Part shown: piece after piece, positions 1 through 32,062 of the stretch | Position numbering within the stretch: position 1 is the stretch's first letter | How the letters are laid out: each line of letters starts with the position of its first letter | NCBI GenBank assembly: GCA_002269645.1 | Contig: NIVC01001891.1 | Coordinates: forward strand, 92,885 to 125,550 | Length of the DNA: 32,666 nucleotides | From: Macrostomum lignano | Lineage: Eukaryota | Reading direction: 5' to 3' | Made by a program: the position numbers and the translations under genes | Notes under the pieces: model-generated | Seen by the model: the letters and a program-made list of their open reading frames with translations, nothing else | Told to the model about the DNA's origin: nothing | The model's database searches: none

Positions 1-799
1 TTAAGCGCGTAGTGAGAGAACTTATTACATATAATGAGTAATAAATAAGCTTTAACGGCGCGAGAGTGTTAATTTGGTATTTATTTATTTTTATTAAACC
101 TAATTTTAATTGTTATTGAATTGCAACAGCTATCTAGTTAACGAGCAATATGAGGGAAGCAAACTTAATTAATTATAACAACAATAAAGTAGTTCTTGCG
201 AAATTTTCACGCCTTCAGCTGGTGCAAACGCCGCTAGAGATTGATAATAATATTTGATAGATGACAAAAAAGGTTAAACAGTTGGTTGCGAATGTATTGG
301 ATTGCCGATTTTAAGAAGCCTGACAATATATATGAATTAGATATGATTTCAAACACATTAACTAGCTACACAATGTTCAAACGACTTGGCCAAACGAACG
401 CACAAAAACGATCAAAGTGGAACAGCGAAAGCGTGAGATTAAAATGTGACAAGTTTTGGACACCGAAGCTTCCAATTATCTGCAAAACTAAGTGAATACA
501 AAAAACTTCAAAAAATATTTATAATATATAATCATTTAACAAAGAAATCCGGACAAACAGAATGAAAATAGCAACTCTTTCAACAAGGAAAAACAAAACA
601 AAACTGGTAGACAACTGAAACACGGGTCAGCACGTGAATTAAATGACAAGGTCGTTAACAAAAAAGACTTGTGTAACGGACGAAAGACACAATTATAATA
701 AGAATGAATCAGGACTGATAATAGTCATATTGATCTGTAAGTATGTACAGCTCTCTGTTCTGGAAAACATACTGCGCAAAAATGGAATGACAATAATTG

Positions 800-852
800 C
801 TGGCTGCCTGCCTGTCTGTCTGTCTGTCTGTCTGCCTGCCTGCCTGCCTGCC

Positions 853-885
<33 letters not shown>

Positions 886-886
886 T

Positions 887-925
<39 letters not shown>

Positions 926-926
926 T

Positions 927-961
<35 letters not shown>

Positions 962-962
962 T

Positions 963-1009
<47 letters not shown>

Positions 1010-1024
1010 GCCTGCCTGCCTGCC

Positions 1025-1079
<55 letters not shown>

Positions 1080-1116
1080 GTGTCTGTCTGTCTGTCTGTC
1101 TGTGTGTCTGTCTGCC

Positions 1117-1155
<39 letters not shown>

Positions 1156-1220
1156 GTGTCTGTCTGTCTGTGTGTCTGTCTGTCTGCCTGTCTGTCTGTC
1201 TGCCTGTCTGTCTGTCTGCC

Positions 1221-1251
<31 letters not shown>

Positions 1252-1338
1252 GTGTCTGTCTGCCTGTCTTTACTGTCTGTCTGTCTGTCTGTCTGCCTGT
1301 CTTTACTGTCTGTCTGTCTGTCTGTCTGTCTGCCTGTC
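800..1338. repeat. (TCTG)n/(GACA)n microsatellite, about 540 bp
   Basis: Directly visible, with CCTG, TGTG and TTTC variants; it accounts for the VCLS/RQTD pseudo-ORFs. Confidence 0.98.
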
Positions 1339-1781
1339 TAACACAAGAAAAGCACAAGTACCAACTGTACATAAAAAGCTGAAAACGGCAAAAAAGGAAA
1401 CGCAGAGCTTGCAAACGAACAGGAAAAAACCAAGTACAGAAAAATGGCGCCAAGAGAATATTAATTTTGTAGTGAACACGCGCACGAACCAATGTCGGAC
1501 AAAAAAGGTAAAATTTTAGTCACCCAGGTAATTGAATACTTGTGCAAAGAATTATTGCCATAGTAACTTTATTAAACGCATAGACTTTCAACAGTTTAGG
1601 AGCGGGGATGACGCAATCACAAAATAACTTAAAAATATTAAACATATATTATATAGTCGTGAATGAGCAGACACCGGATAATTTGCTTGCAATGATAAAT
1701 TGAGTCTTGATTATCTCATGCTTATGGATTATGTAAGCCAATGAGAATCTATGTACAGACCCCAGGTCTAGGGATTCAGAA

Positions 1782-8300: not shown

Positions 8301-9366
8301 CTGACTGAAGGACCTGCAGGGGGATGGTGGCGCCATCTAAAGGACCTGCAGGGGAATGGAATTTAATAACTGCATGACACTTGATTTGATTTTAATCTGC
8401 AAAGGAAATTCAGGAGGCTAGAGAGTAAATAGAACGCTGATTTATTTTGCAAAAGAATTGATGGGGTTGGTGAAATCCTAATGGCAAGACAAATTGAGCG
8501 GAAAGGAAGTAAGGGCCTAACCCGTCTCTCCCTCTTCTCTACCCACCTACCTACTAACCTACCTACTTAATGGACTCCAGCGCCTTCTCAGCAAGGTTAA
8601 CTGCGTTGCACACGCTTCAATGCAGAGCATGAATAGTAAAAAAATTCCCTACACATTTTAGCTAGCATTAGAATGCACTGCTATCTGCGATCTTTAAAGC
8701 GGAATTTTTTTGTGGGCACAATTTGGTGGCAGACTAATAAAATAGCCGATTGCTTGCTATGGGCCCTTAATGCTTTTCGATCGATATCTGGGCCGAAAAA
8801 AAACCAACAACCCTACGGTAAAATAAACTCTCTAGTGCCAGCTCCCATGCAGCTCCGCTTGCAGTGCTCAGGCAATTCTGCCCATTCCGGCTGACATAAA
8901 CACGAGCTCACGCATGCAGGGTGTATAGAGGTCCTGACTTTCTAATCGTCAGGCGTGTACACTCTCTGTGCCTTCGGGGTTGCCTCTCACGGCTCACGGT
9001 AGTGAGGTGAATCGCATGCACGACAATCCCCTTTATTGATGATGTTGCATTATCACTTCACTTGATTAGCTTGATTAAAAACACAAGCTCACACAAACAC
9101 ACACATTTTAACGTGAAAGAATAAGAAAATTTATATTTTCAAATTCTATAAACGCAATTGTAAGCTTTAAGGTTTTCTTACTTTAAGGAAATTTTATTGA
9201 ATTGATTAATAAATTTGAATGCTTTAATGAAAATCCCTAAATCCCTAACGGCTTATGTGCTAAGCTATGGGCAGATCAGGTTACTCCTGCTATGCTATGC
9301 CACTATCAGATCTTTAAATATTCTAGCGAATGAGAGGGGGCACAACTATAGGAGTAGCAGTAGGGT

Positions 9367-9400
<34 letters not shown>

Positions 9401-12210
9401 TATTAAGAAAAGCTCTCTAGCAGCAAGCACGTGACTTGCGATGTCGGGAAATTGATTTGGAGACTGGAAGAGGTGCTGTGCTCTATAAATAGCCACATAT
9501 ATATATATAGTTTATGCGCGGATCACATGATATTCTATAACGGGTGGAAAACTACTGAGCTGCAGTCGGGAGGCAGGGGTAAGGGCGAGGCCTACTCCGT
9601 TTCTCCTGTTATTTCAGCAGGGCTTAGTCGTCACCCTCCTCATTCCTTCCTTCTCTCTTCCCCTTTCTCTCCTCATTCTTGAGAGGCCATCCATCCCATC
9701 CTTCAAAGCCAACTGCATCCCTTAGACGCGCTGCTGAGCTCAGACTCTGCTGCAGCAGTGCGTGGGCGGTAGCGGGCGGCGGCGGGAACTCTGAGCTAGC
9801 GTGAGCAGTGTACATCAGCTGCAGATCTATAGGACTTTTCCTCAATTATTAGCCACTGTCAGACACGATGAGACTGAGAGTACGAAAGAACCAAGAAAGT
9901 TCCTCTTTCCCCACCCCTCTTAGATTGAACTTGGCGAGTGAAAACTTTCCTTATAAAGAAATCGGTCGACTGTTTTCTCTCCTGGCAAAGGCACACCTGT
10001 AGTACCTGTGCCTCAGTACACAAACTGGCAGTAGGAACCTCGCTACTCCCTAACACATTTTTCATCTCCTTAAACTCGTTCAATTCTCGCCCAACTGCCG
10101 GGGAGGAGGGCTGGGCGAGGTCTAAAAATAGCCGCGTGGGCAAAGCGATTTTTATTAATGCAGCGGAGAATTTTATGAGAACCCAGATTATAAAAACCTC
10201 TGTAAGGCAATTAAACTGAAACTGAAACTTTTATCTCTACTTAAGCTTGCAATTATAAATGTAACAGATATAATTCGCGCGCAATAACAATTAAATAACT
10301 GTGTGATTTTAAATTGACATTGCGTTTTACAATACGATGCAACACAAAGTTAGCTTCTGCTTGTATTGATTAGACTGACCTAACTAGTTCGGCTTTTACT
10401 TGGCAGCGAATCTCCGACCTCCTGACCTGATGCAATAAATAAGCTCCTCATTCTCATTTCTGTTCTCAGTGTGTCTCAATATTCCCCTACCAATCCTTCA
10501 TCCTAATCTACTTCTCTCTCCCTCTGCCTCATTCCATCTCACTATCAACTTCTCTCTCCCTCTGACTCAGTCCATCTCACTATCAACTTCTCTCTCCCTC
10601 TGCCTCAGTCCATCTCACTATCAACTTCTATCTCCCTCTGCCTCAGTCTATCTCACTATCAACTTCTATCTCCCTCTGCCTCAGTCCATCTCACTATCAA
10701 CTTCTCTCTCCCTCTGCCTCAGTCCATCTCACTATCAACTTCTCTCTCCCTCTGCCTCAGTCCATCTCACTATCAACTTCTATCTCCCTCTGCCTCAGTC
10801 TATCTCACTCATCTAACTTCTATCTCCCTCTGCCTCAGTCCATCTCTACTATCAACTTCTCTCTCCCTCTGCCTCAGTCCATCTCTCACTATCATTCCAC
10901 TCTCTCTATCTCCCTCTGCCTCAGTCCATCTCCTAGATCTACTTCTATCTCCCTCTGCCTCATTCCATCTCCCTAGATCTACTTCTATCTCCCTCTGCCT
11001 CATTCCATCTCCCTAGATCTACTTCTATCTCCCTCTGCCTCATTCCATCTCCCTAGATCTACTTCTATCTCCCTCTGCCTCATTCCATCTCCCTAAATCT
11101 ACTTCTAACTCCCTCTGCCTCATTCCATCTCCCTAGATCTACTTATATCTCCATCTGCCTCATTCCATCTCCCTAAATCTACTTCTAACTCCCTCTGCCT
11201 CATTCCATCTCCCTAGATCTACTTCTATCTCCCTCTGCCTCATTCCATCTCACTATCTACTTCTATCTCCCTCTGCCTCATTCCATCTCCTTAGATCTAC
11301 TTCTATCTCCATCTGCCTCATTCCATCTTCTTATCTACTTCTCTAGCCACCTAGTCTCTATCTGCTTCATTCCATCTCCCTATCCACTTTCTACTTCTCT
11401 TATCCACCCTCTGTTTCATTCTCGAGTGGTGTAGGCAGAATGTTGCAGAGGTAAGTCACATTTAAGAAGGAACACACGCAGGAAATGCTGTCTGAGCCTG
11501 GGGGATTGGAGGCGGGCAATGATTGATTTCTAAGACTTTCTTTCCTACGTCCGCGCCCCAGTCTGTTTTCTTGTCTCGGTATCTTGCCTATCATTATAGG
11601 CCTCTAAATCAGAACAATTGACACTGGTGACTGGATGGATGAACGATGGTCAGAGCAACCAAAATGTGCCAAAAATTTGTCATAGTCAAAAATCTGGATA
11701 AAAATCTGACCTCCAAGTTAGAGTATACAAATTATACAAATATAAAATAAACAAAACAGCGCGTGCATAGATTTGGGTGGGAACACAGGCACTGTTAGTC
11801 TATAGTTAATAGTATAGTATATCATGTGACTAGCTAATTTTTTAAATGACAGATTCTGCGCAAATCTAGCTAAAACCAAAATTAAATAATCTTTAAAACA
11901 TTGAAACGCTAGCTAGCTTACCAATAATAAAAGTGGCGCCGCCGCCGTTCAATCGCAGATCCCTGAGCCCGATGTTACTGGCCTCCAACTGTTGGCACAC
12001 ACGTTGAATCATGTCGCGCAATGTCAGCTTGACACTAGGACAGCAGTGCCCTCGGCCGTGTATTGTCACCTCCTTCTCCATGAACTCGTGCAGTCGAAGT
12101 ACCTGCTCGTAGCAGAGCACGCTATAGCGGTTGTTGTTGTCGTTGTCCGTCACTTTCTCCTTGACCTTGCCATTGGCATTGTTGTTATCATTGCTCGCTA
12201 TGCAAGTCAT
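2376..12210 (-). CDS. TENT5: Terminal nucleotidyltransferase 5 (TENT5/FAM46) non-canonical poly(A) polymerase; 3 coding exons: 12210-11922, 6004-5214, 2843-2376 (1548 nt, 515 aa)
   Basis: FAM46 motifs in order. Exon 1: YEQVLRLHEFM..VTIHGRG..LRDLRLNGGGATFII. Exon 2: YNDLDLLF, YVQKLVRI, WYLISL, VELKFVDRMRRKFEFTVDSFQIILDSLL, NPEEIRGGGLLKYC, MCSRFFIDFPD. Exon 3: LHEVVKSSTVCLMQQERRSTL. Splice sites are GT-AG and phase-compatible: G|gtaagc (11921) to aacag|GC (6005), phase 1; CAG|gtgagg (5213) to ttgcag|GTG (2844), phase 0. An in-frame TGA lies just upstream of the ATG at 12210; the stop is TGA at 2378-2376. Confidence 0.95.
2910..5148. repeat. 21/23/26-bp minisatellite, about 2.2 kb, filling TENT5 intron 2
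   Basis: Core unit GATAATCTCTGCATTCAGAACCC, with shortened (GATAATCTGC..) and lengthened (..AACCAGTC) variants. Confidence 0.98.
6067..6228. mobile_element. Truncated copy of the 28950-29247 MITE, inverted, in TENT5 intron 1
   Basis: About 160 bp closely similar to the reverse complement of 28950-29110, including one TIR (GTTGCGCATGTATG, 6215-6228). Confidence 0.8.
6848..8357. repeat. GC-rich ~32-33-bp minisatellite, about 1.5 kb, in TENT5 intron 1
   Basis: Unit GGTGGCGCCATCTGAAGGACC(A/T)GCAGGGGGA(A)T; it accounts for all MAPP/RWRHH pseudo-ORFs. Confidence 0.98.
8860..8985 (-). mobile_element. SINE-like repeat, internal fragment, in TENT5 intron 1
   Basis: The minus strand reads GAAGGCACAGAGAGTGTACA...TTAGAAAGTC...CCGGAATGGGCAGAATTGCCTGAG, matching the 19180-19442 copy. 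No tRNA head. Confidence 0.55.
9365..9400. repeat. (GA)n microsatellite
   Basis: Directly visible. Confidence 0.9.
10500..11400. repeat. 38-40-bp pyrimidine-rich minisatellite in TENT5 intron 1
   Basis: Unit CTATCAACTTCTCTCTCCCTCTGCCTCAGTCCATCTCA grading into CTAGATCTACTTCTATCTCCCTCTGCCTCATTCCATCTCC. Confidence 0.95.
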
Positions 12211-12404
12211 TATTAACTCGAATCACGCAAGGTTGGCAGTGGAAAATTTACTATAAACTTGCGTCGTTGCGAGACAGTCGAATTTAGTTGAAAAAGCTGG
12301 TTAGGCTTTTCGAAATAATTATAGTTTCAAGTAGCTTTTGGCCTAAGACAAAAATCTAAGATTAATAAGATTGATTGGTTGCACAAGTTATTGAAAAAGG
12401 CCTA

Positions 12405-16072: not shown

Positions 16073-17220
16073 TTGACTTGACTTACTTGACTTAGCTGCA
16101 GGGGGCTCCGTGCGTCCGGAAACAGCGAGGAGGCGTTGCCGCCCATTTCGCTAACCCCTGGCGACCACGGGCAGCTAGTGCTGCGGTGTCGCGCAGGGAG
16201 TTCCGGTGGCGCCGGCGTCCGCAGCGCGGTCCCCCTCCGGAGAGTCCAGGAGGTGGATTGTCGCTCGCCCGGTAGCCCTTAGGTAGCGGACGAGCTGGCA
16301 GAGATTCTCGAGCCTGAAAACGTCGGAGAAGTCCGGGTTTGGGCCGAGGTACCGTAGGTGAGCCTTCCTGAGTAAAGGCGGGGCATTCACAGATAAAGTG
16401 CTCCGCATTCTCGACACCGGAGAGGCAGAATGGCATTCCTCATTGAGGATTTTTCCCTGGAGGTGACGATGCCTGGCAAAACAGCCATGACCCGAGAGGG
16501 CCATGGTCACCGCCCTGATGTCCCTGCGGTTGAGTCCAAGCAGGGCCCTGCGCAGGGCGGAGGGAGGAAGGACAGGGGACAGCCGCGCGGGATTGCCGGC
16601 AGTCGGTGGCGTTAGCCCACCTCTCCCTGTGCTTAGAAGCCACCCACTGGTTGATCCGAGTGGTGACAACAGCGATGGGGGTGGGGGCCACGGGCAGGGG
16701 ACCAGTTAGAAGAACCGGTCGAGCCAGCCTTGGCCAGGCTCGTTGCCGGAGTGGCCCGAATGTCCGGGGATCCACCTTAGGGACACCTTGATAGAGGCGC
16801 CTAAGCGGTTGAGCTGCCCGATGCAGTCGAGGACTGTGCGCGAGCAGGTGGTGGTGCGCTCAAGGACGTGGATCGCCGCTTGACTGTCCGAGTGAAGGAT
16901 AATCTCCTTCCCCCCGACGCACTGATTGTACAGGTCCATGGCGCAGGAGCTGACGGCGAGAACTTCGTTCTGGAAGACGGTGGAGCAGGTGCCGGTGTGC
17001 TGGGAGAAGGTCGCCACTGTTCTCCCTCCAGACACGATGCAGTAGCCGTAGCCAGATGGATTTGGAACCCATCAGTAAAGCAGTGGATTTCAGTTACTGA
17101 AGCGCTTCGTCCATCCCAGGTGCCGAGGAAAGTGGGAACGACGGACGGCCTCAGGATGACGTAGATATGATTTTTTGCGAGGTCAGCAGTCTGCATGGCT
17201 TCCAACTCTGCAGCGCTGGA
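16073..17220 (-). mobile_element. 5'-truncated, degenerate non-LTR retrotransposon 3' end (RNase H + CCHC zinc knuckle; LOA/R1/I-group-like)
   Basis: Across frames: IHCFTDG, SGYGYCIV, VFQNEVLAV, IILHSDSQAA and [14 protein letters not shown] (non-LTR RNase HI), then MALSGHG..RHRHL and ECPFC...ENAEHFICECPAF (C-terminal CCHC). At least five frameshifts. A short AAGTC-type tandem tail lies at about 16073-16093. No RT domain and no TSD found. Confidence 0.88.
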
Positions 17221-18000: not shown

Positions 18001-18650
18001 TAACTGGGGATAAATGCTGGATCTACCACTATGACCCCGAGTCTAAGCGAGATTCCATGGAGTAGCGGCTCCCTTGGGAAGGCCCCCCCGCAAGTTTAAG
18101 CAAGCGAAGTCAGCTGGAAAGATCTTTGGCTGTTTCTTCTGGGACTGTCAGGGGATCCTGCTCGCCGGGTACCTGCCTGTTGGATATACTGTCACAGGTG
18201 TCCGGTACGCTGAACAGCTTGGCCGGCTTCGTCAGGCAGTTGTCCAGAAGATGCGGGGGAAGCTGAGTGCTGGCCCCTTGCTGCTTCACGACAATGCCCC
18301 AGCTCACACCGCCCAGGTTGCGGTGAATGCTGCCACCACTGCGGGGTTTGAAATCCTCCCCCATCCGGCCTATTCACCAGACCTGCAGGCATCCTCTGAT
18401 TTCCATCTATTCCGTCAGCTCAAGCGGCCAATTCGTGGGCACCATTTCGAGTCCAACGAAGAGGTCATCACCATCGCCAACCAGTGGCTGGAGGACCAAC
18501 CGGCCGACTTCTTCACCAGCGGTATCCGGGCGCTGCGCGACCGATGGCAGAAGTGCATTGATCGCCAGGGGGACTTATGTTGAAAAATAATGCAACATTA
18601 TTCCGAAATTTCTGCTCTTACTATGTAAACGACAAAACTTTGATAACTTT
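18001..18650 (+). pseudogene. Mariner-family transposase C-terminal fragment (DDD domain), disrupted
   Basis: TGDKCWIYHYDPESK (first D), AGKIFGCFFWD, LLHDNAPAH (second D), HPAYSPDL..SDFHLF (third D), RWQKCI..GD(Y)VEK*. In-frame TAG at 18063-18065, a frameshift near 18075 and another near 18576. No N-terminal HTH and no complete TIR. Confidence 0.93.
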
Positions 18651-19774: not shown

Positions 19775-22700
19775 ATGCCATCTCTCGAGCCCAGACTGTT
19801 GAAGGCGGTGTCTGATTACACGGCTGAGGCCACAAACTCCGAGGCCGACCCATCTGACAGTGCTCAACAATTAGCTAACATTAATAACGACATTAGCGGA
19901 CATCGAGTGCATCGATTGCTTGACAGGTTCAAACAGTCGCTAATTGGAGGTCTGCTGCGTATTTCTGGTTCGCTGAAAGAGGCCCACAACGGTCAGTGTA
20001 ATCCTTAATTTGGTGACGCGGTTACCTGTGTACCTTCTTAAATCATTATACGCATACTATGAATGAAACTTAAATTAAAACATCTCGCAAGAATGCACCC
20101 GAAACAACCTAAGAAGGGAGCCCTAAACCATCCCACTAGAGAACCAGAGGATCGAGCCCTAAAACACCAGGGAATCGAGCCCTAAACCACCAGAGAATCG
20201 AACCCTAAGCCACAAGGGAATCGAACCCTAAGCCACAAGGGAATCGAGCCCTAAACCACAAGGGAATCGAGCCCTAAACCACAAGGGAATCGACCCTAAA
20301 CCACAAGGGAATCGAGTCCTAAACCACCAGGGAATCGAGCCCTAAACCACAAGGGAATCGAGCCTTAAACCACAAGGAATCGAGCCCTAAACCACAAGGG
20401 AATCGAGCCTTAAACCACAAGGAATCGAGCCCTAAACCACAAGGGAATCGAGCCTTAAACCACAAGGAATCGAGCCCTAAACCACAAGGGAATCGAGTCC
20501 TAAACCACCAGGGAATCGAGCCCTAAACCACAAGGGAATCGAGCCTTAAACCACAAGGAATCGAGCCCTAAACCACAAGGGAATCGAGCCCTAAACCACA
20601 AGGGAATCGAGCCCTAAACCACAAGGGAATCGAGCCCTAAACCACAAGGGAATCGAGCCCTAAACCACAAGGGAATCAAGCCCTAAAAATTGGGCTTCTT
20701 GAAGTTTATGTTGATAAAATACTTCCAATTTTGATAGGATCATAATTCCGTCTCTATAGGGGTTATAGCCAATTTGGGCTTCTTGAAGTTTATGTTGATA
20801 AAATACTTCCAATTTTGATAGGATCATAATTCCGTCTCTATAGGGGTTTTTGATGGTGCTGATTTCAAATTTGAGATCCATTTTTTGGTAGCTTTAACCC
20901 AATTATATGTAGCTTAAAGCCAACCACTGGGGCATGGGGAATGGGGGGTTTTAGGGTGGGGAGATTCTTCATAAGGATTGATTTTATCAACATAAACTTC
21001 AATAGAGGCATGGAGACCTATTGAAGATTGTGTTGATTTTTTTCAATCCTAATAGGGGGGCGTTATAGCTTAAAACCAACCACCGGGGCATGGGGAATGG
21101 GGGTTTTAGGGTGGGGAGATTCTTCATGAGGATTGATTATATAAACATAAACTTCAATAGAGGCATGGAGACCGAATTTGCTTACCGAAATCAAGTGCTG
21201 TTATTGCCTTAATACACTAGAATTAGTAAAGTAGCCTTGTACAGTTATTGGTTGAGACTTGAGAAGAGAGGTGCAAAGTGCTTCAAAGTTGCTTTGGCTG
21301 GGTGCAGTTAAAATGCGCAAGTGCAAAGATCAGGCGGGTCGTGACGTGGCAGTTTTTAAAAAAAGCGAACAGTGACATGGCACTGTCTATGCATTATAAG
21401 TAAATTGAAAAACTATTATCATCAACTATAAAAGACAATTGCATATTATTTTTCAGATATTAATATTAATCTTTAATTGGCCTAATGAGGTTCTAGCACA
21501 TGTGCTACTATATGAAAAGTCTAGTGGATACACTTTCAAAAATGTATTTGTAGAAACTTTTGCTTACCGAACCTCATTAAGAGAATAGGAAATCGAGTAA
21601 ATTGTGATTGCACCAACCGTACAGGTAACTTTCTGCTGTTTTATTTGCATTTTTGAGATTTTCGGTGTCCCATAAGTGTCCACCACAAGTTTTAGAAAAA
21701 TCGGAAAATTGGAAGTATTTTATCAATATAAACTTCAAGAAGCCCTAAAAATTTACCTCAAATCGTTTTATACCTCAAGCTTACTACTTTCAATTTCGAT
21801 TGTCGTTTAAGCATACCACTGCCTCCAGTACAGTGTCTGGATCACTGCCGCTAACTCAGGCAAGTTCTATGCTAAACCACCAACTGAATATACCATTGGC
21901 ATTGATTTTAGCGGAAGCTGGTCCGGGCGAAAAAGCTCCCGAAGATGACCAAACCGATGAAAATGCGGCTGTCGAAGGTGGCGCGGCAACCGGCACTGCG
22001 TCCAGCAGACGGAAGCTGACTCGGGCCGCTCTGGCGATGAAGAAAGCTGAGAAATTGTATAGCACCGAGTCCGAACTGTACAGCCTGCAGTAAGAAATAA
22101 CGTTTTTTGACAACAAATTTACTCACATCTAGCTTTTTGTGTGCCAAAATGTAGGTCAGTTTTGGAGACTAGGGTGATAAACCTCTGTGAAGCATTTGAC
22201 TAGTCTGGAATGTCGTCATGGCAAGCAGTCATGTCCATTACGTTGAATATTGAGCTTGCACATGAATACAGATACGTAAAAAGGTTGTTTAAGGTCTATA
22301 GCTGAATTTCTCATTCTTGAGCATGTACATACTCACCGCCTTGTCAGTTGGTCCTCATCGCACAATAGAGAAGCCCGCCGCTCGACACGCATCCCCTCGA
22401 ACTCTAACTCCCTCAGAGGTATACTAGACGACTATCGGTTGAATAATCCTCGAGTACTACCAAAGTCGTTGCGATTTCTTGTCACTCGATCGCGGCGTCG
22501 CGGACGAGGCGACAGCGGCAGCAACGTCGAAGGCGAAGAAGACGCCGCTGATCAAAATCTTGCCGCGGTGCACCCGCTGTTAGACCGGCTTGTCGTGGAA
22601 TTCTGCCAGAGGATGGGCATGATGGAGGCGGGCAGGCTGCCAGTTTATCAGGAGCGAATGTTTCTGTGGCTTAGCCGTGAACAGGCGCTGCGAATGCTGG

Positions 22701-25700
22701 CTGATATTGGAGGCACTGGCGGAGCTAGGGATGCAGTATCGCCAGAACAGGTAATTCAATGAATGTGCTTCTCTGAATAGTACGATCCAGTCAACCAGGG
22801 CCCGCTAGCGAGATTCGGGTGCACTTAATCCACCTTGCCAGGTGTTTTTCATCAACCAAGTGAACCTGGACCGGGTACTGACAGATCTGCAGTGCCTGGT
22901 GGCTCGACTAAGCGGCTGCGTGGCCAGCGAAGGCCAGTGCTACCCGGGGCACTGGTGCCGAGATCCGGAGAAAATTCGCGAACAGCACCGGGGTCCGAGT
23001 GACAAGCCGCCCAAAGTGGCGTTCATTGAAAAGCAGTCGGTACGATTGACGAATCTTGATAAAAAAAATTCATTACCCGATTGGGGATTGTGTTGCACTA
23101 AGGATCCTAGCCGAGATTCGGAAAATTTAGTATGGCTGGTTTTACGTACTGGTCTCCTTGGTTTGCATAAATCTAAAGTTTAGCATGTCCTAAAGTTTGC
23201 ATTTCCTAAAGTCCAGCATAGCCTACATTTCCAAGTGACGAAACAAAGTCGGTTAAAAACGCATTAAGGTGCTGGGGGTAGATCTTCAGGCTTTTTATTA
23301 TCATCATATTACCATATTTAAAAAAAATTTTGGAAGCTTTAAGAAAGCAAAATGACTGTTTTCTCACAAGCTCAGATTTCACTTCTCAAGCTCAAAACTT
23401 CATACCGTTGGGTTCGATTAAGTTGTGACCTTAGCGAAAATCGACGTCCCAGTCCTTATGCAGATCCTTAAAGTTCATTAGAGTTCAACATTCACTGTTA
23501 GCACCATTAAATGAGCTATCAAATCACACGAGGGAAAACCAGATGAGGAGAATACCAAAAAATTGATTTCATTTTTTGGCAGTGTCAACAAGCCTTTACA
23601 TGTAGGTTCTAATTGCCCCTAAAAAAACTCAAAATTCATTGAATGAACCTAGCTCGTAATTCCTTAAATAAGAAATTCTTTAATGCTCGTTAACACCTCT
23701 AGATATCGATTCTATTTCAGATGTGCCACCACATCTACATGAAGCACGACTTTGGTCAGGTGTGCAGTGAACCAGATTGTCCGCAGCGTGGCAAACGGAT
23801 GTGCACCTGCTTCCAGGAGAATTTGTTCATCCCGGACACGATTGTACTGGCTACTAAGAAGAAATTTGAATATGTTTGCGATAATATGCTCAGTAAGTAA
23901 ACCTAGAGCTAAGATAGCTAGTGACAATTGAGCTCTAAGGTAGAACAATTGAGTTCAATCCGTTCACTTTTCAGAGGGTGCCTATGGCGACAAGCAGCGC
24001 TGGTTGATTCGAGCCGCCTCCCTTAAAGGCGGCAACGGAGTTCAGCTGATCGATTCGGCCGCGGAGCTGGAGACTTTTGTGCGCTACGACCTGCATAGGC
24101 GGCTGCGAGGACAGTTCTTTGTGCTGCAAAGGTTATTGGATAACTGGCTGCGTGTCCTATTGCTCAATTGTCCTATTATGCGTCTTTGTGTTCAATTGTC
24201 CCTGTGTCATTAGTGACCTAATGTCTTTGTGCTTTGGTGTCTTGTGTCTTATAGGCCTAGTGTCCTTAGTGTCTTCAACTACCTACATGGAAATAGTATC
24301 CTAATGTCTTGGTGTCCTATGTGTCCTAGTGGTCCCAAGTGTCCTATTGATAGTTGTCCTAAGTGCCCTAGTAGTTCCGAGTATCCTATTTATAGTGGTC
24401 ATAAGTGTCCCTAGTGGTTGTAAGTGTCCTAGTTGACCTAAATGTCGTATTGATAGTTGTCCTAAGTGTCCTAGTGGTCCCAAATATCCTATTGACAGTT
24501 GTCTTATATGCCCTAGTGGTCGTAAGTGTCCTAGTTGTCCTAAATGTCCGAGTGGTCCTAAGTGTCCTAGTTTTCCTAAGTGTCCTGGTGGACCTAAGTG
24601 TCCTAGTGGTCTTAAATGTCCTAGTTGTCCTAAGTGTCCTTTTGTATAGCTTCTCTGTCTTTAGTTTGCAATCTCATAGCAACTTTGGTTTTAGTAACAT
24701 CTTACGGTTCCTGGTCCTAGTGTATTATTAAGTGTTGTGTTCTTGTGCCTTAAGTGTCCTAGTGTCCTACACGTAGTATCTAGTGTCTTAGTCTCTTTAG
24801 CGGCTGTGTAATTGTCTTGGTTTTTGTTGTCTTGGTGTCTTGTGTCCTATGATCTTTACTGCGTAAAACTATTCGAATCAAGATTGCAGCTATATATGTC
24901 ATTCTACTTCGCTTGCACTTGCAGACACCTAACAAATCCTCAGTTGTTAGAAGGCCGACGTTTCGATTTGAGAATGTTCCTACTCGTGTCCGTCCTCACT
25001 GACCGACGGGTCGTTGCCTTCCTTCACCCTGGCTACATTCGCATCGCTCAACGCGAGTACGAAGAGAAAAGCAATGATCTGCGCTGTCACTTCACGTGGC
25101 CGTTCACCTGGGACCCCGACTATTCGAGATATGGCCGGGAAAAGACTGCCTCGAACAGCTCGGCCGATTATTGCCGACCATACGACGATGCGCGCGAATC
25201 TCTCGGCCTGCCGTCTATCACTAATAGTCGCGAGCTCGATTCCGCACTCTGGCCAACGACTTCGTCATCGTCAAATCAGCCTTCGTCGTCGACCTCGGAT
25301 TCGACAAATTCGGAGCATCGATTTTTGCGTCGTTTGCATCGAATTGTTAACAACTTGGCCAGCCAGATTGACAGCATTGTGGGCGACAAGCCAGGCAGCT
25401 GGCAGCTGTTTGGACTGGACCTGATGCTCGACGCCAATAAAGAGATCTGGCTGCATGACGTGATGACTTATCCGGGATGCGATGAGCCGGACGCAAGGTC
25501 TGACACGCAGAATCGCGTCCTGCCAGCCGTGCTGACCGAATCGCTGGCTCTTGTGTTCGAATTGAACCAGCGGGACAAGGCCACGAGAGATGCCGGGCTG
25601 TGGCTAGATCTGCCCGACGTGCCAGTCAATCAGCCTGGTGAATGAAAGCTCTTGGATTGGGATTTAATTAGAGCAAATAGATTGGGAGGGGCCGTAGCCT

Positions 25701-26487
25701 CGTGGTCTAACGCGGCGCTCTAATGTGCCAGCGGCCCGGGCTCGATTCCAAGTGCAGGCACATTAATTGAAGGCTAAATTGGAATCTCGGCTTGGCTCTG
25801 CTCGTGAAATTAACAACCAGCTTGAGGACCAACCCCCAAGGCACAGTGAAGTGTACATGCCGAACTATAAATAAAGTAGGGCCGCTGTACACTCCTGTGT
25901 GAGTGTGTGCCTGTGCGTATGATGGTACGTATCCGCGTGCTTGTGTGCCTGCTCAGGCGAGTCGGTGGAATGGCAGTAATGCCTCTTGCCGGTTGTGCGA
26001 CAAGATAGAGTGCGCCTATGTCGCTTGTCGCTTAGAGTGCGCCAGGGTGCACGCACAGCCACTGGCTCGAATAGCGGAGTTTTCTACCTTGAATCTAACG
26101 ACTGGCTTTCTACATTTTTTACATATAGGTCTAATTTGCGCTCAGAAGAACTTCGTTTGGATGTACTCAACGGATGCTGAACGCCTCATCGGCTTCAGAC
26201 CAAAGCGCCAGCGAACTAAGCCACCTCACTGGTACACACAGTGGCGCATCAACGAAGACTTAAATGACTACGTTTTATATCTGAGGAACTTCCGTATTGA
26301 TACCTTCCCGACGCAACTGGATTCGTTCGTATACGGCCGGAAATCTTTCGAGCATTCGCCAGCAGAGAAGATAAGAACAAAAATTAAAAGTTTACAGGGG
26401 ACTGCCTCTGAAACAAAGACTAATAACCCGGCTCCTGCTTCAGAGAAAACACAAGAGTCTGCAGCCTATGCTGAATGTGACGAATAA
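19775..26487 (+). CDS. Tubulin-tyrosine-ligase-like (TTLL10-like) protein with divergent active site; 8 exons: 19775-19991, 21912-22089, 22348-22750, 22842-23039, 23721-23892, 23975-24131, 24925-25637, 26129-26487 (2397 nt, 798 aa)
   Basis: TTL-family motifs in order: LVVEFCQRMG, FIPDTIVL, WLIRAASLKGGNGVQLI (cf. WIxKP..GxGI), VLQRHLTNPQLLEGRRFDLR, GYIRI, LFGLDLMLDANKEIWL, VLPAVLTESLALVF and CAQKNFVW. The last two resemble the TTLL10 C-terminus as I recall it. All seven introns are GT-AG and phases chain without a stop (1,2,0,0,1,2,1); total length is divisible by 3. Exons 1-2 have no recognisable homology and rest on phase compatibility only. Confidence 0.8.
20140..20690. repeat. 22-23-bp minisatellite in intron 1 of the TTLL-like gene
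   Basis: Unit AGGGAATCGAGCCCTAAACCACA. Confidence 0.97.
20692..21745. mobile_element. Non-autonomous TIR element with GG termini and 8-bp TSD (Merlin-like), in intron 1 of the TTLL-like gene
   Basis: 41-bp TIRs with 1 mismatch (20692-20732 / 21705-21745, GGGCTTCTTGAAG...). Perfect 8-bp direct repeat TAAAAATT (20684-20691, 21746-21753). Internal tandem duplications with 84-bp and about 156-bp periods. Confidence 0.8.
24170..24850. repeat. Degenerate low-complexity GTCCTA/AGTGTCCT repeat filling most of intron 6 of the TTLL-like gene
   Basis: Recurrent 9-10-nt units (AAGTGTCCT, AGTTGTCCT, AGTGGTCCT). Confidence 0.85.
25688..26080 (+). mobile_element. tRNA-derived SINE-like element in the last intron of the TTLL-like gene (3' end approximate)
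   Basis: Pol III A-box-like TAGCCTCGTGG (25695-25705) and B-box-like GGCTCGATTCC (25739-25749). Body motifs CAAGGCAC..GTGTACA and GCTCAGG..GGAATGG.CAG..TGCCT are shared with two other copies in the window. Confidence 0.65.
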
Positions 26488-26633: not shown

Positions 26634-27269
26634 ATAGATCCGATGGATTTGTAAATTCCTTTCTTTTGCCGATTTAAAATGCTTGCTTTTTCATTCATTT
26701 TTGAAGGAAAGAATGGATATTACGCCCATGAACTAGCTTTGACTCGAGAACAATCAATGACTAACATCACTAATAATTAAATACATATAAGATCGAATTC
26801 AAACTGTTGAAACCCGATATTTTAAACCCGCTAAATTCGAATCCTCGGAACTATATTGTTGCATGCATTTTTAAATTTAAAAGTCATTCCTACATCATTC
26901 ATGGACACAAATTGGCTCTCTCTGATATAGCCAGTCATGTCGAAAGTCTTTGCGACAGGTTTAGGTAAACCTTGGCCTTGAGCTCAAGAACAAAGTTACA
27001 GTTTCAACCAAATGCAGCAATTGGTGAAAGCCCATCTTTAGGACTGCATGTCACCGATTTGCAAGAGATTGGTAGAAAATTAATAAGCGCTGCTTCATCC
27101 CTATACATGTAATACAGCACTCATGTTAGTTTCCAATCGCAATCCCAAACCTGAAGTTAAACTAAAAAACAAAACAAAAGCGCGGCTGGGGGTGCCGCGC
27201 AGAATAACGTCTGTCTAAACCTTGCCTTGGCAAATTCTGGCCTCTGCCTCTACTTCCCTCGTGCCCTTT

Positions 27270-27860
27270 AAAACTTCTTTCCCTCTCTTCCCTTCCCTTC
27301 CCTTCTCTTCCCCTCTTTCCTCTCTCCTTTCTTTTCTGATCTTATCTATCAAATATTTTTTCTCTCCTAGCTTTCTCCTCTCTTTTCTCTCTCTTGTCTT
27401 CTCTCTCCTCTCTTCATTCATCCCTCTTCTCTCATCTCTTCTTTCTCCTCTTTATTCTCTCTTCTCTCCCCCCTCTCTCTCATATCTCATCTCTCCTCTC
27501 TTCTTTCTCCTCTTTATTCTCTCTTCTTTCCCCCCTCTCTCTTATCTCTTATCGCTCCTCTCTTCTCTCTACTCTCTCTTGTCTTCTCTCTCTTCTCCTG
27601 TCTCATCCCTCTTATCTCCTCTCTTCTCTTCTCTATCTCCTCTTTACACTCTCTCCTCTCTTCTCCTCTATTCTCCTCTCTTCTCTTCTCCTCTCCTCTC
27701 CTCTCCTCTCCTCTCCTCTCCTCTCCTCTCCTCTCCTCTCCTCTCCTCTCCTCTTCTCTTCTCTTACATGTATATCTTTTCTCGCCTCTCCCTGGACTTT
27801 TATTTTCTTTATTTTCTTTTTTCTTGTCTCTGGACTCTCCCCTGTTGCTCTTCCTAATCT
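27270..27860. repeat. CT-rich low-complexity tract including (CTCCT)n
   Basis: Directly visible; pure CTCCT run at about 27680-27752. Confidence 0.95.
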
Positions 27861-28949
27861 TCTGTTCCATCTCCTTTTAGGTAAGAAGATTTGCAATGGA
27901 TCTTGGCCATAGACAGAGTTTTCATTTTTATAGTTAATTGTCATCTACATATGTAACAAAAAAAGTCCATGAGGATATATAAAACTGACCTCTACTGACC
28001 GCTATTAAAAAGCATCAACTAACGACCGAAGACTTAAGGGGAAAGTCATACCCTTTTAACTATCAACGAAAGCAAACGGTGAGTTATGAAAGACGTGTGT
28101 GCAAGCTAGCCTTAGGCAACGATTAGATTAAATTCTAGTTATTGATATTATAGTGTACATGTAGGAAAACAAAAAAGACTCGAAGCATGCGAACAATTAA
28201 GAATTGTGACTGCTGATACTCAGTTTAGCACATGGGATTTTTTGCCGCTGCATTTCGTTGCCCATTGTGAAAACCACCTACTGATGCTGCAAAAACGTTA
28301 AGTATGTGCTTTATTTGAGTCTACTGATGCTTATTATTTAGCAATAGAAACAAAAAATATTATTTTATGCTTGCACTGCAAGAATTATGGCTACCTTTGG
28401 TATCTACTAGGCATGGGTGTTTAACTGCTTCGATTTTAAATGCACAAACAATAGTGACTTTGAACAGTTTTAAAATTCACTCTTCGCAACTTACGGCTCG
28501 CACATGGCGCATGATCAGCAGGCATTCACATGTTGCTGCTTCTAACGGTTGCAAGCAAGTTAGTGCGCTGCCAGAAGTTAAGATTTTCCCGTTGTTTTAG
28601 TTAAATTAATTTTTTTCTTACTATCTTATGACTATGCAATTTGTATCTAGTTGGTTAGACAATTAGACTTTGTCATAAAACAACTTATCCAATAATAGTG
28701 GCAGTGCCGCAGTGGCACTGTTATCATAACCATAGTCCATATCCATATATCCATAATATGCTATATCCATAGCATAGTTCATCTAAGCTTTAGGCCTAGG
28801 ACTAACATTTATTCAAGACTTCACTTTGAATTTAACTTTTTTGTCAATGATATAGGTCTAGACTCTAATCTACTTAAAAACAGACATAGTGTAGCCTAGG
28901 CCTAGAATTATATAAATTGGTACACTCACTGTACAGTTTAGTTGGTATT

Positions 28950-30316: not shown

Positions 30317-31575
30317 TTACAAATGTGTTGCTTCCCTTCTGGCACTCACAAATGAGTCATAAAGGTGATAAAGGTGATAAAGGATGTTCAATTGGCCGAA
30401 CCAACCGTCAACCACAAGCTTCAGCAAGTCAACGAGGCTACCGGCCGACTGCAAATCGTCCATGCTCGTGACGAGGTTAGCCGTCGTCACTGAAGCCGCC
30501 AACGTATCCGTAGCCGCAGTCGCAGGCGAAGGGTAAATGAGAACCGGATGGTTCTCATCAGGCTCCTCCATGACAACAACGATGGCATGGGAGTCTGTCG
30601 TCGAGGAGGCCTTCTTCGGCCTCTTGGTAGCGCTTGGCCTCGGGCCGCTCGATCCGGGCCTCGGGCCGGTGATACGGCGGCACTTCAGTTTCGGCAGACC
30701 CTGGCGAACGCGTGCCGTCTCACGGCAACGCGAGAAAGCGCGTTGTAGTTGGCGCTTAGTGGCGATGACGCCAACGTTCTGCAGCCACTGCTTAGCGATA
30801 AGCAGTTTGGCTGGGTTAGCGGCAGCAGTCAGCTGGTCCCCCAGCTTTCGGCCCGAGAAATTTGCGCCTGAAAACTCCGTCTCAGAGAACAGTGCCCGCA
30901 AGAGACACTGCAACAGCGACAAATGTTCCGAACGCAGTCTCTATGACAAACAGCATAATGTCTGACGCAGCCTGGCCCAGCGTTCCCGGAAGCGCTGGAT
31001 GGAACGGCTGATGCAGTTGTGCATCAGGTACCGGCAGCGGTGCGTCTTCGTCACTGTCAAAGTCGCCTTTGATCAAAAATGAAACGAATGAAATGACTTT
31101 AGAGGGAGGTGTATATGCATCTGCATCGCAATATGCAATTATAATGTATGTGACATTACTTACTGTCACCGACATCTGAGAAGCTATTACCAGAGTCAGA
31201 TGAGGATGCGACATCAACGCTCTCACAATTAGTCTCGTTGTCTGCAGATGCAGACTCACTGTTACAGTCATCCGCAGGTTCGGTATTGTCACTGTCAGCC
31301 GATGGGTCAACCTGATCACAGCATGCTTGTTGACCAGATGTGCCACCGTCACTGTCACCAGGAGCAGGATCAACAGTAACAGCATCACTGTCATCGTCAC
31401 TGCTAACAGCGCCGTTAGAAGCTGCACTTGCAGCGTCAGCGTCAGCTGACGTGCCAGCGCCGCGTTTCTCCACGGGGGATCGCGATCGGGCTAGAGTTGC
31501 TGCATTTAACTTTCTTCGAAACCGGTATGCCCGCATGTACAACCGCCTGTGCAGCCTTTTTTCATCATCCTCCAT
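30317..31575 (-). CDS. Putative BEN-domain-like protein with basic N-terminus and acidic/Ser-rich linker (spliced model tentative; possibly frameshifted or transposon-borne)
   Basis: Exon 31575-31164 (MEDDEKRLHRRLYMRAYRFRRK...SDVGD) ends at A|gtaagt, with an acceptor at aaag|GC (31066). The downstream frame reads SEHLSLLQCLLRALFSETEFSGANFSGRK...ANPAKLLIAKQWLQ...AFSRCRETARVR, which resembles the BEN pattern LLxxLFSxxE..G...LDPxKL..I...C..RR. Joining the two needs either a second intron (31031-30941, weak gtacct donor) or a 2-nt frameshift near 30940. Confidence 0.5.
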
Positions 31576-32062
31576 ACGTCTAGGCAGCTGAGGGCGGGGG
31601 TATTACTGATTCATTAGCACGCGTACATGTCGAAGGAACAGAATCTACGAGTAAATGAGCTATAAGTTTATAAACTTATCTAGCGGTTTGACTTCTGTGA
31701 CAAACTTAGACTTAGACTTTGACCTAATTTAAAATACTTCTTAGCTATTTCTTGTAGGACCTATGTAGGATATAATGGCCCTGCAGATTTAATGGCCCTG
31801 AAAATATAATAGGACGCGACTCTTAGCCAAGAAAGAAAGAAAGAAAATTTAGGGTTGCTGGATTTTGGATAACGGATGTACGACGTATGGCATAAATAAT
31901 ACAGGAAAGAAAGAACAAGTGCGATAAACAAATTGAACCAAAACAGAAGATGTTTCCACTACATCTTCAGTAACGCATCAATTTATTTGACAAACAAACT
32001 CCCCAACATCTGCGAGGTTGTATTACCCCTCGCTGCTAGCCGCAGTTATCTCAGCAGATCGA

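What the first reader, a model, noticed from the sequence alone, without database searches (positions are those of the whole stretch)
23975..25637. TTLL10-like gene with intact frame but rewritten ATP-grasp active site: candidate pseudoenzyme
Seen, against family consensus: WIxKP becomes WLIRA, QxYI becomes QRHL, KFDLR becomes RFDLR, HLTN becomes HFTW, and LEVN becomes HDVM. The D and R of FDLR, the R of GYIR and the D of GLD are kept. Known (TTL numbering from memory): K150 and K198 bind ATP, T241/N242 contact nucleotide, and E331/N333 coordinate Mg and the acyl-phosphate; E331 mutation abolishes activity. Inference: eight exons splice into 798 aa without a stop, so the gene looks maintained yet unlikely to be a normal glycylase. 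It may be a scaffold or regulator of the tubulin code, or have altered chemistry. This is the strongest novelty candidate in the window.
Basis: partly seen in the sequence, partly recalled or inferred. Interest (0 to 1): 0.75.

Follow-up and report, generated by a model that had tools for sequence, protein, structure and literature searches.

The report
Flatworm TTLL gene with rewired ATP site
This is an intact, selectively maintained gene of the flatworm Macrostomum lignano that keeps the fold of a tubulin-modifying ligase but has replaced most residues that hold ATP and magnesium, so it is probably a non-catalytic or chemically altered relative of tubulin glycylases rather than a normal enzyme.

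Summary
The window is Macrostomum lignano DNA. Positions 23975-25637 are exons 6 and 7 of an eight-exon + strand gene (19775-26487, 775 aa, all GT-AG).

It encodes a TTL-family ATP-grasp core (Pfam TTL, 55.8 bits). An AlphaFold model matches TTLL6 and TTL structures.

Mapped onto TTL numbering:
- Changed: K150R, K198R, N242W, E331D, N333M. I found a further loss: the gamma-phosphate lysine (TTL K74 / TTLL6 K125) is Leu.
- Kept: D200, R202, R222, H239, T241, D318.
- "QRHL" is mostly normal, because QRY is the consensus of the relatives.

Among about 170 relatives this combination occurs only in a three-member subclade: this gene, an M. lignano paralogue and an expressed homologue (bootstrap 200/200). 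The subclade evolves under purifying selection (dN/dS about 0.12-0.16), and Arg198 uses three different codons.

Its sister paralogues keep K/K/E/N. The closest named relatives are TTLL10 polyglycylases, but the gene belongs to a separate clade, so far seen only in Macrostomum, with a Cys/His-rich insertion.

Verdict: a credible candidate pseudoenzyme or altered-chemistry TTLL. It is a new variant of a known kind (compare TTLL12 and human TTLL10). Interest is moderate, and activity is untested.

The parts
19775..19991 (+). Exon 1 (ATG at 19775; MPSLEP...AHN), phase-1 donor
   Evidence: Splice model. It matches the internal part of public model P0001.
21912..22089 (+). Exon 2 (AEAGPGE...YSLQ)
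   Evidence: The junction is identical to P0001.
22417..22750 (+). Exon 3: start of the TTL N-domain (AVHPLLDRLVVEFC...MFLWLSRE). An alternative in-phase acceptor at 22348 would add 23 aa.
   Evidence: The intron position is shared with the paralogue locus L003.
22842..23039 (+). Exon 4: end of the N-domain, with VLTDLQCL (Leu259 at 22887-22889 replaces the gamma-phosphate Lys), and the first part of the Cys/His-rich insertion (CYPGHWC, 22938-22958)
   Evidence: N-domain alignment. Role of TTLL6 K125 from bioRxiv 10.1101/2020.06.07.139295.
23721..23892 (+). Exon 5: second part of the Cys/His-rich insertion (C311-H-H...C324...C329...C337-x-C339, 23724-23810), then the FIPDT motif that opens the central domain
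   Evidence: The insertion is present only in the nine-member clade. AF2 pLDDT is 87-94. No Pfam hit.
23975..24131 (+). Exon 6: WLIRAAS (R379 = TTL K150) and the LKGGNG loop (G385 at the TTLL6 Q180 position, K384 at +5), up to VLQ-R
24132..24924 (+). Intron 6, containing a 9/18/42-bp minisatellite (24313-24640)
24925..25637 (+). Exon 7. Contents: HL of QRHL; RRFDLR (R431, D433, R435); GYIR (R458); CHFTW (H474, T476, W477); a Ser-rich low-complexity insert (25262-25312); FGLD (D584); WLHDVM (H596, D597, M599); ELNQRD
26129..26487 (+). Exon 8: C-terminal extension (NFVWMYST...HWYTQWRINEDLNDYVLYLRNFRID...), stop at 26485-26487
   Evidence: tblastn of P0002 residues 705-790 matches 26128-26388 at 51% identity.

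Best explanation
The locus is a functional gene of Macrostomum lignano. [quoted passage not shown] It keeps the whole three-domain ATP-grasp fold but no longer has the canonical ATP/Mg2+ site.

Shown:
- The gene is intact and spliced.
- It belongs to a three-member subclade that fixed K74L, K150R, K198R, N242(W/L/M) and N333M after splitting from paralogues that keep K/K/K/E/N.
- The subclade has since evolved under purifying selection.
- The arginines that hold the substrate carboxylate and the transferred phosphate (R202, R222), together with D200, D318 and an acidic residue at 331, remain invariant.

Inferred:
- The protein cannot run the normal reaction, which is phosphorylation of the acceptor carboxylate by ATP followed by glycine addition.
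- It instead acts through binding. The most plausible role is as a non-catalytic binder or regulator of acidic tails, of tubulin or of another TTLL10-type substrate, or of its catalytically competent paralogues.
- The clade-specific Cys/His-rich module (probably zinc-binding) and the conserved C-terminal extension would provide partner contacts.
For: Family and fold:
- Pfam TTL 55.8 bits against a cut-off of 20.1.
- PDB TTL E=4e-12.
- AF2 with a 96-sequence alignment gives pTM 0.71, with the core at pLDDT above 85.
- Foldseek top hits are TTLL6 (E=1.7e-14, TMt 0.62-0.64) and TTL (TMt up to 0.70).

Identity:
- 100% match to M. lignano UniRef A0A1I8I2H5.

Active site:
- Residue table. Loss of the N-domain Lys.
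- In TTLL6, K174A, K125A and N264A each reduce activity to background. R219/R241 (= TTL R202/R222) are essential. D346/E359 bind Mg.
- TTL E331Q is catalytically dead.

Maintenance:
- Eight GT-AG exons and no stop codon.
- The subclade is monophyletic in 200/200 bootstraps, and the nine-member clade in 199/200.
- dN/dS is 0.15/1.29 between P0002 and the P0003 locus, and 0.385/>2 between P0002 and this gene.
- This copy shows no rate acceleration.
- Of 44 columns at least 90% conserved in the TTLL10 group, 32 are invariant in the subclade. Nine of those are fixed to a new residue.
- Arg at K198 is encoded by CGT, CGC and AGA in the three genes.
- Most intron positions are shared with the paralogue.

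Expression of the type:
- P0002 is an intronless 3-kb contig with UTRs, identical in two runs. It comes from the same run as the canonical-type paralogues P0004 and P0006.
Against: - No biochemical data exist.
- K150R, K198R and E331D are conservative. From memory (not tested here), other ATP-grasp enzymes such as carbamoyl-phosphate synthetase use arginines at phosphate-binding positions.
- A Lys conserved in the subclade at +5 in the beta5-beta6 loop (LKGG) could compensate for lost lysines.
- The strict conservation of the remodelled pocket argues that it still binds a ligand, possibly a nucleotide.
- N242 is already variable in the sister paralogues that keep K/K/E/N, so its loss alone is not diagnostic.
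- Transcription of this exact copy was not verified. The spliced protein could not be looked up.
- dS is saturated, so the omega values are averages over long branches and cannot exclude recent relaxation.
- Tubulin as the partner is assumed only by family analogy.
Confidence: 0.55

Rival explanations
1. It is still an active ATP-grasp ligase with a rewired nucleotide/metal site or altered chemistry. Arg replaces Lys at two phosphate contacts. Asp or Glu is kept at 331. A relocated Lys sits in the glycine-rich loop. Aromatic H/Y at 330 reshapes the base pocket. Such an enzyme might use another nucleotide, another metal geometry or another acceptor/donor pair.
For: - The substitutions are conservative or invariant across paralogues at about 50% identity, not random.
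- R202, R222, D200, D318 and T241 are kept.
- K384 at +5 is conserved in all three subclade members.
- The position equivalent to the donor-pocket residue TTLL6 K377 is hydrophobic (RVLP), as in glycylases (by-eye alignment).
Against: - Three non-conservative losses hit residues that are experimentally essential or metal-binding: K74/K125->Leu, N242/N264->Trp and N333->Met. Met cannot coordinate Mg2+.
- No relative with this combination is known to be active.
Confidence: 0.3
2. It is an ordinary, normally active TTLL10-type polyglycylase, and the motif differences are tolerated variation.
For: - The nearest named relatives are TTLL10.
- The fold is complete.
Against: - The K150/K198/E331/N333 positions are each 87-92% identical across the 186 aligned domains, and this combination is unique to the subclade.
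- The Gln that is invariant in TTLL10 at the TTLL6 Q180 position is Gly here.
- M. lignano has separate canonical TTLL10-like genes: P0010, P0014, P0015.
Confidence: 0.07
3. It is a recently inactivated, decaying pseudogene or an unexpressed duplicate in a duplication-rich genome.
For: - M. lignano carries many TTLL paralogues.
- Expression of this copy is unverified.
- Three private changes occur at conserved positions (Y185H, I330H, N242W).
- The public model has a 2-nt frame difference in the last exon.
Against: - A 2,328-nt ORF runs over eight exons with all GT-AG sites and no stop or frameshift in this window.
- There is no branch acceleration relative to its homologues.
- The C-terminal exon is still 51% identical to P0002.
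Confidence: 0.06
4. The substitutions are sequencing, assembly or gene-model artefacts.
For: Early M. lignano assemblies are indel-prone (from memory, not tested here). The public model is chimeric at both ends.
Against: - Each change needs at least two nucleotide substitutions.
- The same residues occur in an independent genomic paralogue (L003) and in RNA contigs from two runs.
- The protein is 100% identical to the independently derived P0001 over the core.
Confidence: 0.02

Closest known systems
TTLL10 (protein polyglycylase, glycine-chain elongase)
   Same: - It is the best-scoring named relative (Pinctada, Pecten, Schistosoma bovis, Polyodon, Elysia TTLL10).
- It has the same three-domain TTL core.
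- It shares the QRY hinge, GYxR, the 'NF..ly' motif after the C-domain, and a hydrophobic residue at the TTLL6 K377-equivalent donor position.
   Different: - This gene is not nested in the TTLL10 group. It lies on a separate long branch. The TTLL10 HMM is better than other group HMMs by only 11-15 bits.
- It lacks the invariant elongase Gln (Gly385).
- It has a Cys/His-rich insertion of about 70 aa and a distinct C-terminal extension.
- Five of six nucleotide/Mg residues are changed.
Human TTLL10 (naturally inactive glycylase)
   Same: It is a TTLL10-lineage protein that lost enzymatic activity while remaining a gene (Janke 2014, PMC4137062).
   Different: The human case is a recent lineage-specific inactivation. 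By my recollection of Rogowski 2009 (not read here), it rests on two substitutions. Here the ATP site is extensively remodelled, and the remodelled state is itself conserved across paralogues and probably across species.
TTLL12 (proposed TTLL pseudoenzyme)
   Same: It is a TTL-family protein with no detectable glutamylase or glycylase activity, proposed to be a pseudoenzyme that acts by binding (PMC10883266, PMC3520985).
   Different: TTLL12 is ancient, widely conserved and carries an N-terminal SET-like domain. This gene has no SET-like region. It arose independently inside an expansion so far seen only in Macrostomum.
Yeast Pby1 (TTL-like ATP-grasp domain that binds Dcp2)
   Same: It is a precedent for a TTL-like domain whose known biological effect depends on partner binding at the active-site face rather than on catalysis. 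The E693Q mutant still suppresses (PMC7293026).
   Different: Pby1 keeps all catalytic residues and is predicted to be active. It has different partners and a SurE-like N-domain.
M. lignano paralogues P0005 (PAA89652), P0007/PAA94486, P0036 (PAA65136) and transcripts P0004, P0006
   Same: They share the architecture: N-domain, Cys/His insertion, TTL core and C-terminal extension. They fall in the same clade (199/200 bootstraps).
   Different: P0004-P0007 keep K74, K150, K198, E331 and N333. P0036 is degenerate in a different way (D200T, R222I, N333G).

Membership tests
TTL/TTLL family (Pfam PF03133, ATP-grasp fold) | Significant match to the family HMM | tested here: met
   PF03133: E=5.4e-15, 55.8 bits against a gathering score of 20.1. 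TTL chains in PDB: E=4e-12.
TTL/TTLL family (Pfam PF03133, ATP-grasp fold) | Three-domain (N, central, C) TTL core fold | tested here: met
   AF2 pTM 0.71, with the core at pLDDT above 85. Foldseek: TTLL6 E=1.7e-14 and TTL TMt 0.63-0.70 over about 500 columns. This is a prediction, not a solved structure.
TTL/TTLL family (Pfam PF03133, ATP-grasp fold) | Nucleotide- and Mg-binding residues (TTL K74, K150, K198, N242, E331, N333) | tested here: not met
   The residues here are L259, R379, R431, W477, D597 and M599. Only the acidic character at 331 is retained.
TTL/TTLL family (Pfam PF03133, ATP-grasp fold) | Substrate-carboxylate / phosphoryl-transfer residues (TTL D200, R202, R222, D318) | tested here: met
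   D433, R435, R458 and D584 are present. They are invariant in the three subclade members.
TTL/TTLL family (Pfam PF03133, ATP-grasp fold) | ATP-dependent amino-acid ligase activity | not testable with these tools
   Requires biochemical assays.
TTLL10 orthogroup (glycine elongase) | Closest named relatives and best subfamily profile are TTLL10 | tested here: inconclusive
   The top named hits are all TTLL10. The TTLL10-group HMM scores 144 bits against 133 and 129 for two other groups. Few labelled references for other TTLL subfamilies were available.
TTLL10 orthogroup (glycine elongase) | Phylogenetic placement inside the TTLL10 clade | tested here: not met
   The NJ tree places the nine-member clade (199/200) on a long branch outside the 79-member TTLL10-containing group. 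The deep nodes are unsupported, so sister-group status is uncertain.
TTLL10 orthogroup (glycine elongase) | Invariant Gln at the TTLL6 Q180 position (elongase signature; initiases have Arg) | tested here: not met
   Gly385 in this gene, and Ser or Gly in its two homologues. TTLL10-like relatives have NQGKG.
TTLL10 orthogroup (glycine elongase) | Non-basic residues at the donor-pocket positions (TTLL6 K283/K377 equivalents), as in glycylases | tested here: inconclusive
   The K377-equivalent is Leu (RVLP), consistent with a glycylase. The K283-equivalent region is not reliably alignable (by-eye alignment).
TTLL12 (SET-like + TTL-like pseudoenzyme) | N-terminal SET-like domain | tested here: not met
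   No Pfam domain was found upstream of the TTL core at E<=10. The region folds as the TTL N-domain plus a Cys/His insertion.
Pseudoenzyme (operational definition) | Enzyme fold retained, catalytic residues lost, sequence under purifying selection | tested here: met
   Fold. Residues. dN/dS about 0.12-0.16, with the remodelled residues invariant.
Pseudoenzyme (operational definition) | Demonstrated lack of catalytic activity and expression of the protein | not testable with these tools
   mRNA evidence exists only for the homologue P0002.

The most novel reading that the evidence does not exclude
The subclade is a TTLL-derived protein whose remodelled but strictly conserved pocket (R/R/L/M with R202, R222, D318 kept) has a new function. 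One possibility is an ATP-independent 'reader' that docks on acidic or glycylated/glutamylated tails and controls the catalytically competent paralogues of the same Macrostomum expansion. The other is a ligase with a different nucleotide/metal requirement. Either way it would be an independently evolved non-canonical branch of the tubulin-code machinery, in a genetically tractable flatworm.
Probability: 0.2. Interest if true: 0.65.

Novelty: new variant of a known kind. Interest (0 to 1): 0.4.

Why it matters
TTLL enzymes write the tubulin code. Inactive family members (TTLL12, human TTLL10) are known but poorly understood.

Here a non-canonical ATP site is itself conserved. It sits next to canonical sister paralogues in one organism, which forms a natural experiment. 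Comparing and back-mutating six residues could show what a TTLL fold does when it stops being, or changes as, a ligase.

M. lignano has RNAi, transgenesis and rich RNA-seq resources (from memory, not checked here), so the question is testable.

The wider impact is limited. The clade appears lineage-specific and nothing is yet known about its expression or partners.

Tried and rejected
1. AlphaFold with only the three close homologues failed (mean pLDDT 31.6). It was repeated with 96 sequences.
2. Two of the three word-index homology searches gave nothing new. The alignment query was swamped, probably by the low-complexity N-terminus of P0001. The P0003 query returned only itself. No further subclade members could therefore be recruited.
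P0001 is not on record as a called gene.
4. The UniProt names 'TAZ-type domain' (this gene) and 'Doublecortin domain' (paralogues) were checked. There is no Pfam support for zf-TAZ or DCX, so I did not use them.
5. A TTLL12-like reading was rejected because there is no SET-like domain.
6. A retrocopy origin was rejected. The gene has seven introns, and most positions are shared with the paralogue.
7. dN/dS between this copy and its homologues is limited by saturated dS. I report it only as an upper-bound style average.
9. Literature searches for Macrostomum with TTLL or tubulin tyrosine ligase found nothing.
Full report
**What is at the coordinates.**
- The window is eukaryotic DNA with GT-AG introns and many minisatellites.
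- A spliced translation of the region is 100% identical to UniRef A0A1I8I2H5 of the free-living flatworm Macrostomum lignano (P0001).
- I rebuilt the gene on the + strand as eight exons, all with ag/gt boundaries: 19775-19991, 21912-22089, 22417-22750, 22842-23039, 23721-23892, 23975-24131, 24925-25637 and 26129-26487. This gives 2,328 nt and 775 aa with one terminal stop.
- The finding's span (23975-25637) is exactly exon 6, intron 6 and exon 7, which is the catalytic core.
The public model and both homologues support 22417.
- The public model is wrong at both ends. Its N-terminus is an antisense translation of a neighbouring gene. Its C-terminus differs by a 2-nt frame shift from this window. 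Here the frame stays open and remains 51% identical to the homologue P0002.

**Family and fold.**
- The core matches Pfam TTL (PF03133; 55.8 bits, cut-off 20.1) and solved TTL structures (E=4e-12).
- AlphaFold with three sequences failed. With a 96-sequence alignment it gave pTM 0.71 and pLDDT mostly above 85 from the N-domain to the end of the C-domain.
- Foldseek against the PDB returned TTLL6 (E=1.7e-14) and TTL (TM-score up to 0.70 on the target) over about 500 columns.
- The protein is therefore a complete TTL-type ATP-grasp core, not a fragment.

**The motif observation.**
- I used the HMMER alignment to chicken TTL chain 9ixb_F, whose numbering reproduces the published K150, K198, R202, R222, N242, D318, E331 and N333.
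- Changed: K150R (R379, CGA), K184R, Y185H, K198R (R431, CGT), N242W (W477, TGG), I330H, E331D (D597) and N333M (M599, ATG).
- Kept: Q183, D200, R202, R222, H239, T241 and D318.
The lysine of the 'LTxK/KDKQ' motif, equivalent to TTLL6 K125 (TTL K74), is Leu259 in VLTDLQCL.
- Literature on the roles of these residues:
  - In TTLL6, K174 (= K150) binds the alpha-phosphate, N264 (= N242) the beta-phosphate, K125 the gamma-phosphate and T263 the ribose.
  - K174A, K125A and N264A each drop activity to background.
  - R219/R241 (= R202/R222) hold the transferred phosphate and are essential.
  - D346/E359 (= D318/E331) bind the two Mg2+ ions (bioRxiv 10.1101/2020.06.07.139295).
  - TTL E331Q is catalytically dead (PMC3563685, PMC7293026).
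  - The role of N333 as a Mg ligand is general ATP-grasp knowledge and was not verified in a paper here.

**Is it more than chance or error?**
- In 186 aligned domains from the 150 best relatives in a 1.84-billion-protein library plus cluster members:
  - K150 is K in 163 and R in 5.
  - K198 is K in 172 and R in 5.
  - E331 is E in 171 and D in 3.
  - N333 is N in 161 and M in 4.
- The combination R/R/M with a hydrophobic residue at 242 occurs only in this gene (and its public model), in P0003 (an M. lignano paralogue on contig NIVC01001827) and in P0002.
- 'QRHL' is less remarkable. QRY is the consensus of the nearest relatives, and only His420 is private to this copy.
- Each key change needs at least two nucleotide substitutions. 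The same residues are present in an independent genomic locus and in RNA contigs. Sequencing error is excluded.

**Relatives and classification.**
- The deep profile search found 1,422 relatives at E<=1e-3 but only seven at E<=1e-30.
- Proteins P0004-P0007 and P0036 share the whole architecture. Those of known origin are all M. lignano.
- That architecture is:
  - a TTL N-domain;
  - a Cys/His-rich insertion of about 70 residues between the N-domain and the 'F-x-P-E-T' motif, with conserved C282, C311-x-H313, C324, C329 and C337-x-C/H339;
  - the core;
  - a C-terminal extension.
- The insertion is absent from TTLL10-like proteins, has no Pfam match and is modelled confidently. A zinc-binding role is my inference.
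- In a neighbour-joining tree of 144 domains, the three R/R/M proteins group in 200/200 bootstraps and the nine-member clade in 199/200.
- The next-best hits with names are TTLL10 polyglycylases from molluscs, Schistosoma, a coral and a fish.
- The clade sits on a long branch outside the 79-member TTLL10-containing group. A TTLL10-group HMM beats the other group HMMs by only 11-15 bits.
- The Gln said to be invariant in TTLL10 elongases (TTLL6 Q180 position) is Gly385 here.
- M. lignano also has canonical TTLL10-like genes (P0010, P0014, P0015).
- 'TTLL10-like' is therefore acceptable as a nearest-neighbour label, but the gene is not a TTLL10 orthologue.

**Polarity of the changes.**
- The sister proteins P0004-P0007 keep K74, K150, K198, E331 and N333. 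The R/R/L/M state is therefore derived and arose once, on the stem of the three-member subclade.
- The HLTN loop is already degenerate across the whole nine-member clade (A/G, T/K, T/A, E/E). Loss of N242 therefore predates the subclade and is weaker evidence on its own.
- P0036 is degenerate in a different way (D200T, R222I, N333G). This suggests repeated loss of canonical sites in this expansion.

**Maintenance.**
- Nei-Gojobori estimates are dN=0.15, dS=1.29 between P0002 and the P0003 locus. Between P0002 and this gene they are dN=0.385, dS about 2.4, which is saturated. The averaged omega is about 0.12-0.16 or lower.
- This copy is no more distant from the outgroups than its two homologues.
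- Of 44 columns that are at least 90% conserved in the TTLL10 group, 32 are invariant among the three subclade proteins. Of these, 23 keep the ancestral residue and nine are fixed to a new one, including both K->R changes and N->M.
- Arg at the K198 position is encoded by CGT, CGC and AGA in the three genes. The amino acid is therefore held while the codons drift.
- Most intron positions are shared with the paralogue, so the gene is not a retrocopy.
- P0002 is an intronless 3-kb contig with 5' and 3' UTRs and an upstream in-frame stop. It is identical in two SRA runs, which makes it an mRNA.
- P0004 and P0006 come from the same run. R/R/M-type and canonical-type paralogues are therefore co-expressed in that organism, whose identity I could not determine.
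- Transcription of the window's own copy could not be checked.

**Interpretation.**
- Canonical catalysis needs the three lysines and N242 to position ATP, and D318/E331/N333 to hold two Mg2+ ions. Here one lysine is Leu, two are Arg, N242 is Trp and N333 is Met. A normal ATP-dependent glycylase reaction is unlikely.
- The pocket is not decaying. The new residues are conserved, and the substrate-side arginines and acids are intact.
- The best reading (0.55) is a selectively maintained non-catalytic TTLL. It would work by binding acidic tails or paralogous enzymes, by analogy with TTLL12 (PMC10883266) and with the catalysis-independent action of the TTL-like domain of Pby1 (PMC7293026).
- The main rival (0.30) is a still-active ligase with a rewired nucleotide/metal site. 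In that reading a subclade-conserved Lys at +5 of the glycine-rich loop (K384) could compensate.
- An ordinary active TTLL10 (0.07), a recent pseudogene (0.06) and an artefact (0.02) are less likely.

**Novelty and score.**
- Inactive TTLL family members are known: TTLL12, and human TTLL10 (PMC4137062).
- This one is an independent origin, inside a clade so far seen only in Macrostomum, with its own insertion and tail and with a conserved remodelled site. I found no literature on Macrostomum TTLLs.
- I rate it a new variant of a known kind, with interest 0.40.
- It is a well-founded, testable candidate in a tractable model. It is lineage-restricted and has no expression or biochemical data.

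Noticed in passing
window 2379-2900, 5121-6029, 11896-12222 (minus strand): An upstream, divergently oriented gene encodes an NTP_transf_7 (FAM46/TENT5-type) nucleotidyltransferase. Pfam PF07984 gives E=4e-81 on the middle exon.
   Followed up: partly
window 11917-12213 (+) and 26129-26180: Public model A0A1I8I2H5 (P0001) is chimeric. Its N-terminus is an antisense translation of the FAM46-like exon. Its C-terminus ('LICSEEFRLDVLNGC') reflects a 2-nt frame difference just after 26137. In this window the frame stays open for 119 codons and matches the homologue's C-terminal extension.
   Followed up: partly
window 18047-18580 (+) and 16709-17071 (-): Transposable-element remnants lie upstream of the gene: a mariner-type DDE transposase fragment (PF01359/PF13358) and a retroelement RNase H fragment (PF00075).
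   Followed up: partly
window 20151-20687 and 24313-24640: There are intronic minisatellites. Intron 1 has a 23-bp unit in about 23.6 copies (93% matches). Intron 6 has a 9/18/42-bp unit (TGTCCTAAGTGTCCTAGTGG-like), which is responsible for the strong AT skew of that kilobase.
   Followed up: no
window 25690-25760 (intron 7): A tRNA-like stretch has box A/box B-like motifs (…TGGTCTAACGCG…GGCTCGATTCC…). It may be a tRNA-derived SINE head. Neither ARAGORN nor Rfam calls it.
   Followed up: partly
window 643-1519, 6831-8391, 10439-11431, 27219-27909: Several long low-complexity tandem arrays create spurious long ORFs on both strands, for example the CLSV/DRQT, MAPPSPCRSFRWRHH and SPLLSS repeats.
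   Followed up: no
P0036 (M. lignano PAA65136/PAA68623), related locus not in window: Another member of the same clade is degenerate at different catalytic positions (D200T, R222I, HLTN->EEEA, N333G). Loss of canonical sites may therefore have happened more than once in this expansion.
   Followed up: no
L001, L004, L005 (Logan run SRR30276812): One RNA run of an unidentified organism contains full-length mRNAs of three clade members. One is R/R/M-type (P0002) and two are canonical-type (P0004, P0006). P0002 is about 78% identical to the M. lignano P0003 locus, so the run is probably from another Macrostomum-like species.
   Followed up: partly
window 30320-31602 (minus strand): Long ORFs downstream of the gene (207, 202 and 148 aa) have no Pfam match. 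They may be exons of an unannotated gene.
   Followed up: no
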